Numbered from the stretch's first letter, positions 7 to 6,839 are shown. The stretch: DNA of 6,839 nucleotides from Fonticula alba ATCC 38817 (GCA_000388065.2 KB932208.1), one strand, 5' to 3'. The notes: a model not told the origin generated them from the letters alone. Program-made: numbers and translations.

Positions 7-51
<45 letters not shown>

Positions 52-545: not shown

Positions 546-1223
546 NNNNNNNNNNNNNNNNNNNNNNNNNNNNNNNNNNNNNNNNNNNNNNNNNNNNNNN
601 NNNNNNNNNNNNNNNNNNNNNNNNNNNNNNNNNNNNNNNNNNNNNNNNNNNNNNNNNNNNNNNNNNNNNNNNNNNNNNNNNNNNNNNNNNNNNNNNNNNN
701 NNNNNNNNNNNNNNNNNNNNNNNNNNNNNNNNNNNNNNNNNNNNNNNNNNNNNNNNNNNNNNNNNNNNNNNNNNNNNNNNNNNNNNNNNNNNNNNNNNNN
801 NNNNNNNNNNNNNNNNNNNNNNNNNNNNNNNNNNNNNNNNNNNNNNNNNNNNNNNNNNNNNNNNNNNNNNNNNNNNNNNNNNNNNNNNNNNNNNNNNNNN
901 NNNNNNNNNNNNNNNNNNNNNNNNNNNNNNNNNNNNNNNNNNNNNNNNNNNNNNNNNNNNNNNNNNNNNNNNNNNNNNNNNNNNNNNNNNNNNNNNNNNN
1001 NNNNNNNNNNNNNNNNNNNNNNNNNNNNNNNNNNNNNNNNNNNNNNNNNNNNNNNNNNNNNNNNNNNNNNNNNNNNNNNNNNNNNNNNNNNNNNNNNNNN
1101 NNNNNNNNNNNNNNNNNNNNNNNNNNNNNNNNNNNNNNNNNNNNNNNNNNNNNNNNNNNNNNNNNNNNNNNNNNNNNNNNNNNNNNNNNNNNNNNNNNNN
1201 NNNNNNNNNNNNNNNNNNNNNNN
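546..1223. other. Assembly gap (678 N)
   Basis: Run of N, directly followed by a C run. ORFs spanning it (262-1236, 302-1522, 384-1862, 506-1336) are not interpretable as continuous. Confidence 0.99.
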
Positions 1224-1241: not shown

Positions 1242-1862
1242 GCCTTCCACCAAAGCACCAAAGAGCACTCATCCAGTGGCAGCGCTGCCTGGGAGAAGGA
1301 GCAGGCCCGGCGCACCGGTGGAGGATCGGTCGGCATGCTCTGGGCCCGAGGGGAGCTTCGACTTCTGTCGATCCTAGAGCGGGCATGTTCCGATGCTGCA
1401 ATTCAGCCGGCCGGGGATGCTGCACCGGCGCCCACCGGGCAAGCCGGCCTGGCCACCCGCCTGGAGGACCGCAAGCGTCTCCGCGCCCGGTGCATGTCTT
1501 TGCTGGAGGACCTGGAGGATGACCTCCGCGATCGGTGGTGGTTCTCCCCCCAGCGGGCAGCGGGAGCCGAGCGTCGGCCGCTGGTCCTGCCGCCGGCCGA
1601 GTGGCCACCGGCCGGATGGGCCGCCGCCTCGGCTGCAGGCGATGCCCCCTGGTGGTTTGACCCCAGCGAATCGCCCCTGCCACAGGAGGCCGAGCTGCGC
1701 CTCTGGTGGGGCTTCTGCTCATCGGCCCATGGCGGCCCCTGTCCGGCGGATGAGTGCGCACTCCTGCCACCTCCTGCGGCGAGTGCAGTTGTCAGCCCCG
1801 AGGGCGTCGCCGGCTCCGACACCACCACTGACGGGGAAGCCTCCCAGAGGGACGAGCTGTGA
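1242..1862 (+). CDS. Last coding exon of an unknown protein ending in RDEL
   Basis: Open frame from the gap edge to TGA 1860-1862 with protein-like content (helical LEDRKRLRARCMSLLEDLEDDLRDRWWF, Ala/Pro-rich tail). Preceded by a C run and CTCAC...AAG| possible acceptor at 1241, so the exon start is tentative. No family recognised. Confidence 0.68.
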   Translation, partial: AFHQSTKEHSSSGSAAWEKEQARRTGGGSVGMLWARGELRLLSILERACSDAAIQPAGDAAPAPTGQAGLATRLEDRKRLRARCMSLLEDLEDDLRDRWWFSPQRAAGAERRPLVLPPAEWPPAGWAAASAAGDAPWWFDPSESPLPQEAELRLWWGFCSSAHGGPCPADECALLPPPAASAVVSPEGVAGSDTTTDGEASQRDEL

Positions 1863-1904: not shown

Positions 1905-4832
1905 TTAGAGGCCATCACCGGTGATACACCCGAAAACCAATACCTGGAGGCTCCCTCCCCCCTCCCCTACGATGGCATGCAATACACGCAGACATGCCTA
2001 CAAGCTGACGATCAGCCATGGTGAACAAGGGTCCGTGAGGACGAGAGGCGGAGAGAGATCAAGAGACAAAGAGGCAAAGAGACAAAGAGGGAAGGAGGAT
2101 GCGTCGAGGCATCCATGTGCACAGAGGCCGTCTATTTCGTGGGACAGGGCTCCGCAGGTATCCGGCGCGGTTGGGCAATGGACCCCACGCCATCCGGGTG
2201 GGGGAAGATTGTCAGGGCTCGCTTGAGCTCCGGATTGCGGAGGACAATGGTCGTGCCAAAGGACTCGGGCGCATGGCCCAGGTAGGGGACCGTCTGGTTG
2301 ATCGAGCACCGGAAGGAAGCCGCACGCGACGGGGAGGCTCCCATGAACATCGATGCCGGGGCCGATGCCGGGGCCGGGTCCAGGTCAGCCGTGGACCGGG
2401 CATCATCCTCAAGCACTTCTAGGGTGGCCAGGGCATCGGCCGAGCTGCCGGCTATCCGGTCTCCATGCGGGTCATCACCGAGGCGTGCGGTCGAGTGTGT
2501 TTGGATGGCCCCGGAGACGCGGCCCCAATGACAAGGACAGAAGGGGCCCCCGGTCCCACGGGCGGCTGCCGCCGCGATGGCCGCTGCCGCCGCATCATTG
2601 CCCCGCCCATGAGGCGAGGCATGACCCCGACCATTGGCCGACAGCCAGGAGGGGCCGACTGCTGATTGCAGGGCAATGGTCGACTGAAGGGAGAGGCTTT
2701 GTGAAAGGGGGAGACTGGCAGCCAGGAAGTCGGACTCCATGGAGGCACATCCTCCGGGGGAATTGGCAAGCAATGGGCACAAGTCGGCTGGCAGGGGGAA
2801 ATAGATGTCCCCATCCGGGGAAGTCAACAGCTTCTCGATGTACCAGACAATGGTGTGCTCTTCCTGTGGGCGGAGGAAGACCCGGGCGGCCAGGGGGGAT
2901 GAGGGTCAGGGAGGGGCGAGGAAGGGGAAAGGGAGGGGGACAAATTGGGGCGGTTTAAATGCCTCGGGCAATGCATACCATGCGACATTGAACAGGCGAC
3001 GTGGCGTCCGGCGCAAATGCGCCAGCTTCACTGGTCGAGGGCAAATCCGACGGCAGGCGCATCGCCAGACAGGGGCCGCCAGCAACATCGACATACATAG
3101 ACCGGACCAGGCGCGGGGTATTCACCCGGCGCATTGAGCCCCCGCGATCGAACTCCGCCACAAAGGTCAGATGCTCCCCCTGGATGCCGGGCACCGTGAG
3201 GGTCGATCGCAGCTGGTGGAGCCCGGTGGCCGGGGACGCCACCGGCAGGGCAAGGCGAATGCTGGTATTGGCCAAAACCGTGAAGGAGGGAGGGATGTCG
3301 GCGAAGTGGATGACCTCCGCCGGGGGAGGGCAGGCGCCTCCAGCCGCCAACCGGCCATCCCTCGGTGGGGATGCCCACCCAAGAGCCCACTCGGCGAAGG
3401 AGCCGGATGTGCGGGCATGGTCGTGCTTGGCCGAAAGGAGGAAGACCGAAGCCAGACCCTTTAGCCTCCACTCTTCGGGCGAAGGAGCCTCGCCTGAAGC
3501 ATCGTGGATGGTCTCGAGGAAGGCGGCTTCCGGGGGGAAGGGCAGCTCCAGCTCCAGCGCCAGAGGCCGGAGGAAGTTCCCAGGCAGGCTGCAACGATCT
3601 CGCGCAAGCGTCGAGACCAGGAAGGAATTGTCCATCGAGTTGAGAGCCGGCAGGTGCTCGGTAAAGTGACGCGTGACCGGGACATGGGGCTCGGCAGCGG
3701 CAAGGCCGTGACCCACCAGGCGAGGCGCCTGTTCACTTGAAGCCACGGGGCGAAGGTGCGTCGGCAGGAGAATGCGCTCCGAGGCATCGACAAGTCCCGC
3801 TGGCAGGTCGCTCAGTGAGCCTCGAGCACCGGCGGCCTTGCGCAGCGGTTGAACGGGGGAGGCACGCTGGCGGAGCTGCTCATTCGAGGAGATGATGGAA
3901 ATCTCGTCAATGTGGAAACTGGACACCTCAAGAAGCCATCCTTCCCGTGGGGGGTGCACGCTGGTGGCCGCCGATGCGACGGCCGGGTACTTCTTGAGCA
4001 TTGCCCGGACAAAGGAGTCGGAGAAGAGAATCTTCGAAGGCCAGGGGGAGGAGAATAGGTCAGGAGCCGACATGAGAGCGATGCTGGTACAGGGGGGCGG
4101 GGAGGGGGGGGGGGGGGACACCCATCCGGATGGGCGCATACGCACTTTGCTTTGGAGAGTCAAGTCCGCCGGGGCCGCCGGATCCGTGGCGACGGAACAC
4201 TGGTAAAGCCGGGTGTGGAAGGCGGAGGGCTGGGCCTCGGAGTGGGGAAGGAAGATGGAGCTGTCGGAGCTGGACTTGAGCATGGGCGGCGAGAAGGAAG
4301 GGCGGGAGGGACGGAGAGATCGACCGGTCGAAGGCAGCGGCAGTGATGGACGGGTAAGATCCGCGGCCGAGGACGACTCGGCCCCCTGGACATTGGCCGC
4401 CATGGCCATGCCGCCGGTGGCTGCCTTTGGTGCGGGGGACAAGGCAAAGGAGGCTGGCAGGGGAGGCGGCGATGAGGAGTCGGGATCGCTGTCATCCATG
4501 GGCAAGCCGTCGGCGGGCAGTTGCCGGGCCGCAACCGTCGCCATTGGCGGTGCGGCTGTGGGCCCGGACAGGGGGGAGACCGTCGATGCAGCAGGCAGCC
4601 CAGGGGCATTGGGTGCTTGCCAAGTGCGCATTGCTTCGAAAAACTCATCCTCGCTGCTGCTATCGGATGGGGTAGACTCGAGGACCGGCTGGGAGTGACT
4701 TGGGAGGGCGAAATTCATGACCATCCGAATGGGCGGCGGGCTTTTCGGTGTGCGAGCCCTCTGGTTTTTGCGATACTCCTTCCGAGTTGCGGACGAGCCG
4801 GGCGACGGGGGGGGGGGGGGGGCAAGGTGACT

Positions 4833-4867
<35 letters not shown>

Positions 4868-5326
4868 TCAGCGATCGGGAAGGGGAAGAAAAAAAGGTGC
4901 GCCAATGTCGAGGGCAGGAAGGCGCGACATACCCGGAGTGAACGCCGGCCACGGGTCTCGGTATAGCCGATCAGGTCATCGGGGCCTTCGCGAAATTGAA
5001 CCTTCTGCCCGGTGGGACGCTTGACCGTCGAGGCAGGACCGTGACAGTTGGCCGGACAGGTCGCCAGGCGCAAGGCAGTCGCAGTGGTCGGGGTGTGGGC
5101 GGATGGGAAGGAGTTGGGGCAAGTGCCACGACAATCGAAGTCCACCCAAAGCGGGGTGCTGATGGGGGCCAGTCCGTAGAGCGAGCGCTTGGCCGCCTCC
5201 TCGCGAATGATGCCATTTACATAGGACTCCGGTTCGAAGGCCTGGAAGGAGGAGACAACCTCAAACAGGTGCTGGGGAATTGCGAGTGAGTGGACACCGA
5301 GAGATGGGGCTCGACCAGGGAGGAGG

Positions 5327-5364
<38 letters not shown>

Positions 5365-6301
5365 GGGGATAGCCTGGCAGTACCTCGGATTCCTNNNNNN
5401 NNNNGGGAGGGGATAGCCTGGCAGTACCTCGGATTCCTTCTCGCGACCAATTAATTGCGTGATGGTGAGGCGTGTCAGAGCCATCTTCAGGACCTCCAGT
5501 TTGAGGGCTTCATAATTGAGGAAGATCTGCCACCATGGATTCAAAGAGAGGGAGGGGCGAATGTAAGGGTCAGTGGTGAGGGGGGCGAGGAAGGCGAGGG
5601 AAGAGCATGTCGATGCGGGAGCATTCGCCAAGGAGGGAGGAAAGAGCAAGGGTGGAGGTGATGTCCCGACCTTCGAGGCATCCGGGAAAGAGGGAGCGTC
5701 GCGAACGGCCAGGGGGTCGGGGCTCTTGCTGCGGTTGAAGAAGGTCAACGGATCCAGAGCCTGGTCGACGATCTGATCGGCCGAGATCCGACGATCGTTC
5801 GACAATTCACCGAGGATGGAGAAGTACTTGGCCAATGGGGGGGCCGTTTCACTATCACCCTGGGGGGTCAGTGCCGGGCGTGTCATTCAATCTGCGGCGG
5901 AGGGTAGAGCATGGGGGACAAACCTCTCAACGAGAGCTGCATGCTCATCGAGTCGAAGCCGACACCGAGCCGCGATCTCGGCCAAACGGCTGGCATAAAG
6001 ACGCTCGAGTTCCAGTCTGGTAGATGGTTTGCATGTGTAATATGCGTGTGTTTGTGTATGTGTGTGTGTGGGGGGGGGGGCGTGTTCAGAAGGAAAGAGA
6101 AGTGTGAGTGGAAGTCCCTGAAGGAGGGGCAGTCGGAGGGGTTGTCGGGTGGAAGTGAGATTCGTACCTTTCCCGCAGGTAGTCCTCAATGATAAGTGAC
6201 TCGACCTTGGCATTGTTGGCCAGAAAGACCAACCGGGGCCCGGCAGGACAGGCGCGCGGTCGGCTCAGGGCCGAGACGCGGGCGGAAGGACTATCTGACA
6301 T
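1905..6301 (-). CDS. Spliced gene, about 1,100 aa: F-BAR (FCH)-like N-terminus, disordered linker and mu-homology-like C-terminus (muniscin / FCHo-Syp1-like endocytic adaptor)
   Basis: Manual exon model on the minus strand: 6301-6168, 6016-5924, 5851-5671, 5526-5428, 5271-4933, 4830(or 4778/4760)-4146, 4031-2979, 2863-2189, 1997-1905. All junctions are GT-AG and phase-compatible except exon 5/6, which needs either a 1-nt error in the G16 run at 4807-4822 or a downstream in-phase acceptor. N-terminus reads MSDSP...RLVFLANNAKVESLIIEDYLRERLELERLYASRLAEIA, matching the FCH pattern (FLKERxxIExEYAKxLxKLA). If the last intron is not real, the CDS ends at TAG 2132-2134. Family assignment is by motif recognition only. 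Confidence 0.75.
1998..2188 (-). other. Probable intron 8 (191 nt, phase 0)
   Basis: GGC|GTGGGG donor, strong C/T tract at 2041-2100, CTGAT motif, TTGTAG| acceptor. Removes TAG 2132-2134 and adds a 30-aa beta-strand-like exon ending at TAA 1905-1907. Confidence 0.5.
2061..2090. repeat. 14-nt direct repeat AAGAGACAAAGAGG x2
   Basis: Copies at 2061-2074 and 2077-2090, inside the C/T tract of probable intron 8. Confidence 0.8.
2864..2978 (-). other. Intron 7 (115 nt, phase 0)
   Basis: ATG|GTATGC donor, long C/T tract, CTGAC, CCACAG| acceptor. Joins the 665-aa ORF (PVQCRM) to the frame of the 231-aa ORF (EEHTIVWYIEKL) and removes TAA 2955-2957. Confidence 0.9.
4032..4145 (-). other. Probable intron 6 (114 nt, phase 0, in-frame and stop-free)
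   Basis: AAA|GTGCGT donor, C14 run, CTGAC then pyrimidine tract, in-phase acceptor TCGAAG|ATT. AAG acceptors are less common than YAG, and the frame is open without splicing. Confidence 0.55.
4807..4866 (-). repeat. Poly-C (plus-strand G16 and G34) runs
   Basis: G 4807-4822 and G 4833-4866; source of the poly-Pro/poly-Gly stretches in the ORF track. Confidence 0.95.
4831..4932 (-). other. Intron 5 (phase 0 donor; acceptor uncertain)
   Basis: Strong CGG|GTATGT donor, U/C tract, CTGAT motif, C34 run, CCCAG| at 4831. Using this acceptor leads to TAG 4660-4662 unless the G16 run (4807-4822) is really 15 or 18 nt. In-phase alternatives are AAG| (next exon from 4778) and CCAG| (from 4760). Confidence 0.65.
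5272..5427 (-). other. Intron 4 (phase 0; contains C34 run and the 10-N gap)
   Basis: GAG|GTACTG donor, poly-C, CTCAC motif, CCCCAG| acceptor; joins EKESE to HLFEVV in frame. True length is uncertain because of the duplicated gap edge and the homopolymer. Confidence 0.8.
5361..5438. other. 10-N gap flanked by an exact 34-nt duplication (unmerged contig overlap)
   Basis: GGGAGGGGATAGCCTGGCAGTACCTCGGATTCCT occurs at 5361-5394 and 5405-5438, separated by N 5395-5404, next to a G34 run. Confidence 0.9.
5527..5670 (-). other. Intron 3 (144 nt, phase 0, in-frame and stop-free)
   Basis: AAG|GTCGGG donor, C/T-rich body, CTGAC motif, GGCAG| acceptor. Its retained translation is Pro/Ser-rich and interrupts helical F-BAR-like sequence. 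Confidence 0.72.
5852..5923 (-). other. Intron 2 (72 nt, phase 2)
   Basis: GAG AG|GTTTGT donor and CTGAC branch-like motif. The in-phase acceptor is GATAG| (5852), not the nearer CAG. Removes the in-frame TGA at 5887-5889. Confidence 0.75.
6017..6167 (-). other. Intron 1 (151 nt, phase 2)
   Basis: AAAG|GTACGA donor and TACCAG| acceptor; pyrimidine-rich with C11 run and CA repeats. Removal joins YLRE-R-LELERLYA, reconstituting the FCH motif from two separate listed ORFs. Confidence 0.9.
6046..6080 (-). repeat. Imperfect (CA)n microsatellite plus C11 in intron 1
   Basis: Plus strand GTGTGTTTGTGTATGTGTGTGTGTG followed by G 6070-6080. Confidence 0.85.
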
Positions 6302-6839
6302 TTGATACTGGCATTTGGGGGGGGGGCGAGACTGAGGAGAAGGCGGAGAGGGAGGGAGAGAGAAAGAGAGGGGAGGAGGGAGGGAAGAGAAGAGGGGAGT
6401 ATCCTGGGCCGCGAAGATCAGGGCACCAGGGAGGGGCACTGAAAAAGTCGGAACAAGGGGGCCCCGGAAGGGTGGAGAAGGGCGGAAGAGGCAAGATCCA
6501 GGCCGGGAGACCGAAAATTGGCCTCCTGGCCGGACTGGTGCGATCAATCGACCCGCGCTCTTGAGCCGGCACCGAATGCGCACGCTCCCCTGCGGTCGGT
6601 GTGCAGTCCATTCTCCTCCTCTGGGGCTTGGGCCAGTTTTGTTCGCCCCCGGCCTACCGACCGAAAAAGGCGCGCTGGTCACTGGGGAGAGAGGGGGGGG
6701 GGGGGGAAGATCGCCCGCGGCCGTTCTTTACCGCGAAAAAAACACCGGCGCACAGACTCACACATGCGTCTGTGCTCATTCTGCGCGCGTGTCGAGCACA
6801 TAATTGTGTCGAGCGTCCACGCCCCCCCCCCCCCCCCCC
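6302..6839. promoter_or_regulatory. Putative 5' UTR/promoter region of the minus-strand gene
   Basis: Positional inference only: upstream of ATG 6301, low-complexity purine/pyrimidine tracts, no protein-like ORF recognised. Confidence 0.4.

What the first reader, a model, noticed from the sequence alone, without database searches (positions are those of the whole stretch)
1905..6301. F-BAR plus mu-homology protein whose MHD looks adaptin-mu-like rather than typical muniscin
Seen: F-BAR-like N-terminus and ordered mu-like motifs including HFADIPP and HTIVWYIEKL. The latter only appears after splicing intron 7, which independently supports the gene model. Established: F-BAR plus MHD defines muniscins (FCHo1/2, Syp1), described mainly in animals and fungi, with the MHD thought to derive from the TSET/TPLATE-complex subunit TCUP/TML; the IPP motif is typical of AP-complex mu subunits and stonins. 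Inference: if the host is not an opisthokont, this is either a deeper origin of muniscins or an independent F-BAR/MHD fusion. The putative MHD also carries two insertions of very roughly 100-150 aa of low-complexity sequence, which is unusual.
Basis: partly seen in the sequence, partly recalled or inferred. Interest (0 to 1): 0.7.

Follow-up and report, generated by a model that had tools for sequence, protein, structure and literature searches.

The report
Very divergent muniscin-like gene in Fonticula
This is a real eight-exon gene of the slime mould Fonticula alba, a relative of fungi, that most likely encodes a very fast-evolving version of the FCHo/Syp1 "muniscin" endocytosis proteins; since such proteins are expected in this lineage, the find is modest, not a deeper origin.

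Summary
The gene is real. It lies on the minus strand, has 8 exons (6301..2135) and 7 GT-AG introns, and matches the public protein H696_04972 of Fonticula alba (1087 aa) exactly. The gap at 5395-5404 lies in intron 4 between two identical 34-nt copies, so it looks like an unmerged contig overlap that leaves the reading frame intact.

The host is an opisthokont, so the "deeper origin or independent fusion" branch falls away.

The protein is an orphan by sequence. Exhaustive phmmer against 1.84 billion representatives found only itself. Metagenome and PDB searches gave nothing relevant. Pfam gave only a sub-threshold FCH hit (E 0.004, 17.9 bits, cutoff 27.8) and no muHD or Adap_comp_sub hit. 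Single-sequence AlphaFold models were unusable (pLDDT 36-38), so the MHD fold is untested.

A protein-language-model search of the whole protein returned only FCH+muHD clusters, fungal Syp1-like and chordate FCHO2-like, at scores of 0.80-0.83. That is only a lead, but it names exactly the predicted family.

Best reading (about 0.65): a highly divergent muniscin with a shortened F-BAR and an oversized C-terminal region. "Adaptin-mu-like" is not supported, because IPP-type motifs occur by chance in 76% of shuffles. A published survey listed no FCH-MHD protein for F. alba, and this gene would fill that gap.

The parts
2135..6301 (-). Coding span of the gene H696_04972 (1087 aa, 8 exons); stop codon at 2134-2132
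   Evidence: The exon translations match P0001.
6168..6301 (-). Exon 1 (aa 1-44 plus 2 nt)
   Evidence: donor GTACGA
5924..6016 (-). Exon 2 (aa 45-76, split codons at both ends)
   Evidence: donor GTTTGT
5671..5851 (-). Exon 3 (to aa 136)
   Evidence: the acceptor ..GATAG agrees with P0001
5428..5526 (-). Exon 4 (aa 137-169)
   Evidence: donor GTACTG. The last 11 nt of the exon lie inside the duplicated 34-mer.
4933..5271 (-). Exon 5 (aa 170-282)
4146..4778 (-). Exon 6 (aa 283-493). It encodes most of the Pro/Ser/Ala-rich linker and includes the acidic-aromatic patch EDEFFEAM (4652-4629).
2979..4031 (-). Exon 7 (aa 494-844). This is the first part of the putative mu-homology-like region and includes HFADIPP (3308-3288).
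   Evidence: Pfam found nothing in it.
2135..2863 (-). Exon 8 (aa 845-1087). It starts with EEHTIVWYIEKL (the motif is at 2857-2828). It holds a low-complexity insert at about aa 880-1020 (2758-2336) and ends with beta-strand-like C-terminal segments.
5953..6190 (-). aa 38-66 (interrupted by intron 1), the stretch matched by Pfam FCH PF00611 profile positions 19-47
   Evidence: E 0.019; E 0.004, 17.9 bits; gathering cutoff 27.8
5179..6244 (-). N-terminal helical domain, about aa 20-200 (shortened F-BAR candidate)
   Evidence: helices 23-76, 80-93, 100-116, 134-162, 168-176 and 183-198, at low confidence..
5395..5404 (.). Assembly gap of 10 N inside intron 4. It is flanked by identical 34-nt copies (5361-5394 and 5405-5438), which points to an unmerged contig overlap.
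2864..2978 (-). Intron 7 (115 nt, GTATGC..CACAG). Its removal joins exon 7 to the W-motif exon.

Best explanation
The gene encodes the Fonticula alba counterpart of the muniscins (fungal Syp1, animal FCHo1/2), diverged so far that family models no longer recognise it.

Proposed working (inferred, not shown):
- The N-terminal FCH/F-BAR-type helical module (about aa 20-200, shorter than the usual 260 or so) dimerises and binds the plasma membrane.
- The roughly 290-aa disordered Pro/Ser/Ala-rich linker (aa 201-493, with an acidic-aromatic patch EDEFFEAM) offers short motifs for coat components.
- The C-terminal region (aa 494-1087) folds as a mu-homology-type beta domain interrupted by large loops. 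It binds EH-domain scaffolds of the Ede1/Eps15/intersectin type, and cargo, at nascent clathrin pits.

Shown: the gene structure, the identity with H696_04972, the opisthokont host, the weak FCH signal, and the whole-protein resemblance to FCH+muHD clusters.
Inferred: the MHD fold, the binding partners and the endocytic role.
For: - Gene model and host.
- FCH is the only Pfam family hit, at the N-terminus and in register (profile positions 19-48 on aa 38-67), with E 0.004.
- The N-terminus is predicted all-helical, with no strands, so it is not a longin domain (low confidence).
- Between the two ends lies a Pro/Ser/Ala-rich stretch (P+S+A+G 52-70% in the windows covering about aa 321-460), as in muniscin linkers.
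- Whole-protein language-model search, named clusters: 30 hits. The only family sets shown are muHD+FCH and muHD+GMIP-like_FCH+FCH (Basidiomycota, Ascomycota, chordate FCHO2-like). Scores are 0.83-0.80, with 177-167 of 256 shared features. All ten of the best hits share a family or clan with the top one. Taken alone this is only a lead, but it names exactly the family proposed beforehand from motifs.
- The mu-type motifs come in the right order and spacing (IPP at 739, the Trp strand at 849). That happened in 0.1% of shuffles, though the pattern was defined after the fact.
- Muniscins are expected in an opisthokont (PMC4031984). Table S4 of PMC4824007 lists EH-EH-coiled-coil proteins in F. alba (H696_01266, H696_04301).
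Against: - No muHD (PF10291) or Adap_comp_sub (PF00928) hit, even at E up to 10, on the whole protein, on single exons or on sub-pieces.
- phmmer against PDB chains gave no relevant match.
- Exhaustive phmmer found no relative at E <= 0.001 among 1.84 billion representatives. The metagenome scan found none.
- The FCH score is below Pfam's cutoff.
- The AlphaFold models are unusable (pLDDT 38.5 and 36.1), and Foldseek on the C-terminal model returned noise.
- Atlas scores under 0.9 are reached by a third of shuffled proteins.
- The helical domain is about 60 aa too short for a canonical F-BAR. The C-terminal region is about twice the length of a normal MHD, and the low-confidence model shows helices at aa 594-713.
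Confidence: 0.65

Rival explanations
1. It is an FCH/F-BAR-type protein whose C-terminal 590 aa are a lineage-specific region unrelated to mu-homology domains. The mu-like motifs are then chance matches in a proline-rich sequence.
For: - No MHD signal from any profile or PDB sequence search.
- [ILVF]PP is found in 76% of shuffles.
- The low-confidence model has helices at aa 594-713.
- The atlas resemblance could be driven by the FCH part plus the long disordered stretches.
Against: - Every family set shown by the atlas search carries muHD. In two of the clusters FCH is present in only 56-65% of members while muHD is in 99-100%. No FCH+SH3 or FCH+RhoGAP cluster was listed.
- The order and spacing of the motifs fit an MHD.
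Confidence: 0.2
2. It is a fast-evolving orphan protein with neither a true FCH nor a true MHD. The weak FCH hit and the atlas neighbours are then noise from helical and low-complexity composition.
For: - The only hit in 1.84 billion representatives is the protein itself.
- The FCH score is below the curated cutoff.
- Atlas scores of 0.80-0.83 lie in the range that shuffled proteins often reach.
Against: Two methods of different kind, a Pfam profile and language-model features, point to the same rare family. That family was also named beforehand, from motifs, by a reader who had no tools. The FCH E-value of 0.004 already allows for the 24,736 models searched.
Confidence: 0.1
3. One reading: the MHD is of the AP-complex mu or stonin type, so the protein is an independent F-BAR plus adaptin-MHD fusion and not a TCUP-derived muniscin.
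For: The IPP motif at aa 739-741. The exon-7 start (ILFSDSFVRAML) recalls, from memory only, the start of AP-mu C-terminal domains; this was not tested.
Against: - No PF00928 hit.
- AP mu subunits are well conserved, yet none appeared in the exhaustive search.
- The nearest atlas clusters carry muHD, not Adap_comp_sub.
- IPP is expected by chance.
- Table S4 of PMC4824007 lists five MHD-carrying F. alba proteins, and this gene is not among them.
Confidence: 0.05

Closest known systems
Syp1 (Saccharomyces cerevisiae) and fungal FCH-muHD proteins
   Same: N-terminal FCH/F-BAR-type module, a long disordered linker and a C-terminal domain. These are the nearest language-model clusters (Basidiomycota and Ascomycota, 0.83-0.81). 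The host belongs to the fungal side of the opisthokonts.
   Different: There is no detectable sequence similarity. At 1087 aa the protein is longer than the 638-764 aa cluster representatives. The helical domain is about 60 aa shorter, and the C-terminal region is about twice the length of an MHD, with an Ala/Gly/Ser-rich insert.
FCHo1/FCHo2 (animals)
   Same: The same three-part layout. A chordate FCHO2-like cluster scored 0.80.
   Different: PMC4824007 searched for the AP2-activator linker motif with a profile built from animal FCHO proteins; I did not look for it here. No NPF, DPF or clathrin-box motif was found in the protein. The Pfam families are not recognised.
TCUP/TML, medium subunit of TSET/TPLATE
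   Same: It is held to be the source of the muniscin MHD (PMC4031984).
   Different: From general knowledge, TCUP/TML has a longin-type N-terminus. Here the N-terminus is predicted all-helical and FCH-like. According to PMC4031984, opisthokonts have no full TSET subunit.
AP-complex mu subunits and stonins
   Same: An IPP motif and a Trp-containing strand, in the order seen in mu C-terminal domains (the comparison is from memory).
   Different: No Adap_comp_sub hit, no longin-like N-terminus and no AP-mu relative in any search.

Membership tests
Muniscin (FCHo/Syp1) | N-terminal FCH/F-BAR domain recognised by Pfam PF00611 at or above the gathering score | tested here: inconclusive
   It is the only Pfam hit, correctly placed, at E 0.004 and 17.9 bits, but below the 27.8-bit cutoff.
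Muniscin (FCHo/Syp1) | Full-length F-BAR (about 260 aa, with long helix 3 and helix 4 arms) | tested here: inconclusive
   The helical region ends near aa 200. There is a proline-rich break at aa 117-133, and only about 30 aa are left for the last long helix. The model's confidence is too low to decide.
Muniscin (FCHo/Syp1) | C-terminal mu-homology domain recognised by sequence (Pfam muHD PF10291) | tested here: not met
   No hit at E up to 10 on the whole protein, on exons or on eight sub-pieces. There was also no match to any solved chain.
Muniscin (FCHo/Syp1) | Mu-homology fold (two beta subdomains) at the C-terminus | tested here: inconclusive
   The single-sequence AlphaFold model has pLDDT 36.1. 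Foldseek on it gave only noise. No alignment could be built, because no relatives were found.
Muniscin (FCHo/Syp1) | Disordered linker between the two domains | tested here: met
   In the windows covering about aa 321-460, P+S+A+G is 52-70% and sequence entropy is low. No helix or strand is predicted after aa 198 up to aa 278.
Muniscin (FCHo/Syp1) | Whole-protein resemblance to known FCH+muHD proteins | tested here: inconclusive
   All atlas family sets shown are muHD+FCH, at scores of 0.80-0.83. By the tool's own calibration, scores under 0.9 are only a lead.
Muniscin (FCHo/Syp1) | Opisthokont host | tested here: met
   Fonticula alba, Opisthokonta/Rotosphaerida.
Muniscin (FCHo/Syp1) | MHD binds Eps15/Ede1-type EH scaffolds; the protein arrives early at clathrin pits | not testable with these tools
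   The only related fact is that Table S4 of PMC4824007 lists EH-EH-coiled-coil proteins in F. alba.
AP-complex mu subunit / stonin | Adap_comp_sub (PF00928) C-terminal domain, with a longin (mu) or stonin-homology N-terminus | tested here: not met
   No PF00928 hit. The N-terminus is FCH-like and predicted all-helical. No AP-mu relative appeared in the exhaustive search.
TCUP/TML (TSET) | Longin-like N-terminal domain plus MHD, within a TSET complex | tested here: not met
   No strands are predicted in aa 1-290 (low confidence), and the region carries the FCH signal instead. Whether the genome holds TSET partners was not tested.

The most novel reading that the evidence does not exclude
Fonticula alba carries a radically remodelled muniscin. 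It has a 'mini' F-BAR that lacks most of the helix 3-4 arms, so it may not form a normal curvature-sensing crescent. Its mu-homology domain is split by two inserts of about 150 aa. It has evolved so fast that no relative is detectable among 1.84 billion proteins. Less likely, its MHD is of the adaptin type, which would make it an independent F-BAR/MHD fusion.
Probability: 0.3. Interest if true: 0.5.

Novelty: new variant of a known kind. Interest (0 to 1): 0.3.

Why it matters
A published survey of endocytic proteins listed five FCH proteins and five MHD proteins in Fonticula alba, but no FCH-MHD protein and no FCHO homologue (PMC4824007, Tables S3 and S4). If this gene is a muniscin, that absence comes from extreme divergence and is not a loss. 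Muniscins would then be present on the nucleariid branch too, which fits their proposed origin in the ancestral opisthokont (PMC4031984). A naturally shortened F-BAR joined to an expanded MHD would also show how much of each domain the early endocytic function really needs. It does not change the picture of when muniscins arose.

Tried and rejected
- Pfam on each exon by reference gave nothing.
- Pfam on the whole protein, its halves and ten sub-pieces gave only sub-threshold FCH.
- Word-indexed protein search of the exon-7 region found only the protein itself.
- Exhaustive phmmer of the full protein found only itself.
- The metagenome locus scan matched 115 patterns, and none was confirmed as a relative.
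- phmmer against PDB, with the whole protein, aa 720-1087 and aa 1-230, gave only chance-level hits such as a TCR alpha chain and an amidohydrolase.
- The atlas feature search on aa 495-1087 alone gave no usable hit.
- Foldseek against PDB with the C-terminal model gave E >= 0.5, which is noise. I ran no further fold searches, because the models are too poor.
The splice junctions and the gap have not been checked against reads.
I used the public protein P0001, which was found by reference and is identical to the exon translations.
- I did not type known FCHo, Syp1 or AP-mu sequences from memory, so there is no explicit alignment or MHD phylogeny.
- A longin-type N-terminus (the TCUP or AP-mu reading) was considered and rejected. 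The region gives the FCH signal and an all-helical prediction.
- An exon hidden in the gap was considered, because the F-BAR is short just there. It is unlikely, given the identical 34-nt flanks.
Full report
**Gene model**

The window is GC-rich and carries a minus-strand gene. I derived eight exons from splice signals and reading frame:

| Exon | Window coordinates |
|---|---|
| 1 | 6301-6168 |
| 2 | 6016-5924 |
| 3 | 5851-5671 |
| 4 | 5526-5428 |
| 5 | 5271-4933 |
| 6 | 4778-4146 |
| 7 | 4031-2979 |
| 8 | 2863-2135 |

- The stop codon is at 2134-2132.
- All seven introns are GT-AG and 72-156 nt long.
- The exons add up to 3261 nt, which is 1087 codons, with no internal stop.
- I searched a stop-free reading frame that spans exon 7 (window 2958-4952, minus strand), scoring only its exon-7 part. 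It returned one protein, P0001, at 100% identity over the exon-7 part scored. This is NCBI hypothetical protein H696_04972 of Fonticula alba, 1087 aa.
- Every exon translation is a consecutive substring of P0001.
From then on P0001 served as the reference.
HFADIPP is at aa 735-741 (3308-3288). HTIVWYIEKL is at aa 847-856 (2857-2828), at the start of exon 8, in a different frame from exon 7.
- The coding region ends at 2135, not 1905.

**The assembly gap**

- The ten N at 5395-5404 lie in intron 4 (5427-5272).
- The 34 bases before the gap (5361-5394) are identical to the 34 bases after it (5405-5438). This is what two overlapping contig ends look like when they were scaffolded without being merged.
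- Exon 4 ends at 5428, inside the right-hand copy. Exon 5 starts at 5271. Both junctions are in phase 0.
- The frame therefore does not depend on the gap. If the copies collapse into one, the intron is simply 112 nt long instead of 156.
- A hidden exon cannot be ruled out without reads, but the identical flanks make it unlikely.

**Host**

Fonticula alba belongs to Opisthokonta, order Rotosphaerida. It lies on the fungal side of the opisthokonts. Hirst et al. place the origin of muniscins in the ancestral opisthokont, through fusion of the TCUP MHD with an F-BAR (PMC4031984).

**Sequence-level tests**

- Pfam gave nothing for any single exon.
- On the whole protein and on the N-terminal part, the only family hit was FCH (PF00611). 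It matched aa 38-66 to profile positions 19-47, with E 0.019-0.096.
- That improved to E 0.004 and 17.9 bits when aa 20-130 were searched alone. This is still below the 27.8-bit gathering score.
- Neither muHD (PF10291) nor Adap_comp_sub (PF00928) was reported at E up to 10 for the C-terminal half or any of eight sub-pieces.
- phmmer against all PDB chain sequences gave no relevant match.
- Exhaustive phmmer against 1.84 billion cluster representatives returned only the query itself at E <= 0.001.
- A metagenome scan confirmed no relative.
- By HMMER standards the protein is an orphan.

**Structure**

With no relatives, no alignment could be built.

- The single-sequence AlphaFold model of aa 1-290 had mean pLDDT 38.5. 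It was all-helical: helices 23-76, 80-93, 100-116, 134-162, 168-176 and 183-198, with no strands.
- The model of aa 494-1087 had mean pLDDT 36.1. It showed six short strands at aa 751-818 and helices at aa 594-713.
- Neither model is usable. Foldseek with the C-terminal model gave only noise, E >= 0.5.

**Language-model lead**

- A feature search of aa 495-1087 alone gave no usable hit.
- The whole protein, searched against named clusters, gave 30 hits.
- The only family sets shown were muHD+FCH and muHD+GMIP-like_FCH+FCH: a Basidiomycota cluster at 0.83, two Ascomycota clusters at 0.81, and a chordate 'F-BAR domain only protein 2-like' cluster at 0.80.
- These shared 167-177 of 256 features with the query.
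- All ten of the best hits share a family or clan with the top one.
- By the tool's own calibration, scores under 0.9 are only a lead, and a third of shuffled proteins reach 0.8.
- Even so, the family returned is exactly the rare one proposed beforehand from motifs, and it also contains the FCH domain that Pfam weakly detects.
- No FCH+SH3, FCH+RhoGAP or Adap_comp_sub cluster was listed.
- In two of the clusters muHD is in 99-100% of members while FCH is in only 56-65%. The resemblance is therefore not simply an FCH effect.

**Motif statistics**

- The protein is 10.5% proline.
- In 20,000 shuffles of the C-terminal 594 aa, an [ILVF]PP triplet appeared in 76%, with a mean of 1.35 per shuffle.
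- A Trp-strand pattern ([ILV][ILV]W.[ILV]..[ILMF]) appeared in about 1%.
- Both together, in the right order and 70-140 aa apart, appeared in 0.1%.
- The patterns were written after seeing the sequence, so these figures are optimistic.
- IPP alone, the basis of 'adaptin-mu-like', carries no weight.

**Anatomy**

- aa 20-200: a helical module with an FCH signature. It has a proline-rich break at aa 117-133 and only about 30 aa for the last long helix. That makes it about 60 aa shorter than a canonical F-BAR, from my knowledge of the family. Another first-stage note on this window says the same (s1-066571).
- aa 201-493: a low-complexity Pro/Ser/Ala linker with one acidic-aromatic patch, EDEFFEAM. 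It has no NPF or DPF motif and no clathrin box.
- aa 494-1087: about twice the length of a normal MHD. It has a clearly low-complexity Ala/Gly/Ser insert at about aa 880-1020 and a region of mixed composition at aa 541-733.
- The 'two low-complexity inserts' are thus half confirmed. They can only be delimited once an alignment or a fold exists.

**Literature**

Dergai et al. screened the F. alba proteome (PMC4824007).

- Table S3 gives FCHO = 0 for F. alba.
- Table S4 lists five FCH proteins and five MHD proteins for F. alba, and nothing under FCH-MHD. Chytrids, Mucoromycota, yeasts, Ustilago, Capsaspora and Sphaeroforma each have an entry there.
- H696_04972 does not appear in the stored supplement. 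The file was cut when it was stored.
- The same table lists EH-EH-coiled-coil proteins in F. alba (H696_01266, H696_04301), which are possible partners.

**Verdict**

- Most likely (about 0.65) this is the Fonticula muniscin, diverged beyond the reach of family models, with a shortened F-BAR and an expanded C-terminal domain.
- The rivals are an FCH protein with an unrelated C-terminus (0.2), an orphan with no true domains (0.1), and an adaptin-type MHD fusion (0.05).
- The result is modest. It probably fills a reported absence, and it does not change when muniscins arose.

Noticed in passing
window 4833-4866, 5330-5363, 4807-4822, 4104-4117, 6070-6080: Introns 1, 4, 5 and 6 carry long homopolymer runs that read as poly-C on the sense strand, up to 34 nt. 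The introns are 39-58% C overall. They look like all-cytosine 'polypyrimidine' tracts upstream of the acceptors. Runs of this length are also error-prone in assembly.
   Followed up: partly
window 5527-5670: Intron 3 is 144 nt long, in frame and free of stop codons. If retained, it would add 48 proline-rich residues inside the short F-BAR-like domain. No reads were available to test retention.
   Followed up: no
window 1335-1862 (+): A convergent neighbour gene of 175 aa, called in the public record. Its stop codon is 270 nt from the stop codon of the muniscin-like gene. It has a recurring tryptophan motif (RWWF, PWWF, LWWGF) and no significant Pfam hit; the best was DUF3456 at E 0.12.
   Followed up: partly
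window 546-1223: A second, much larger assembly gap of 678 N lies upstream of the neighbour gene. Long poly-C runs sit at the start of the window (7-50, 52-77) and at its end (6822-6839).
   Followed up: no
L001:1054-3794: The next gene on the 5' side of the muniscin-like gene, in the public contig KB932208.1, is 498 aa long and also has no Pfam family on record.
   Followed up: no
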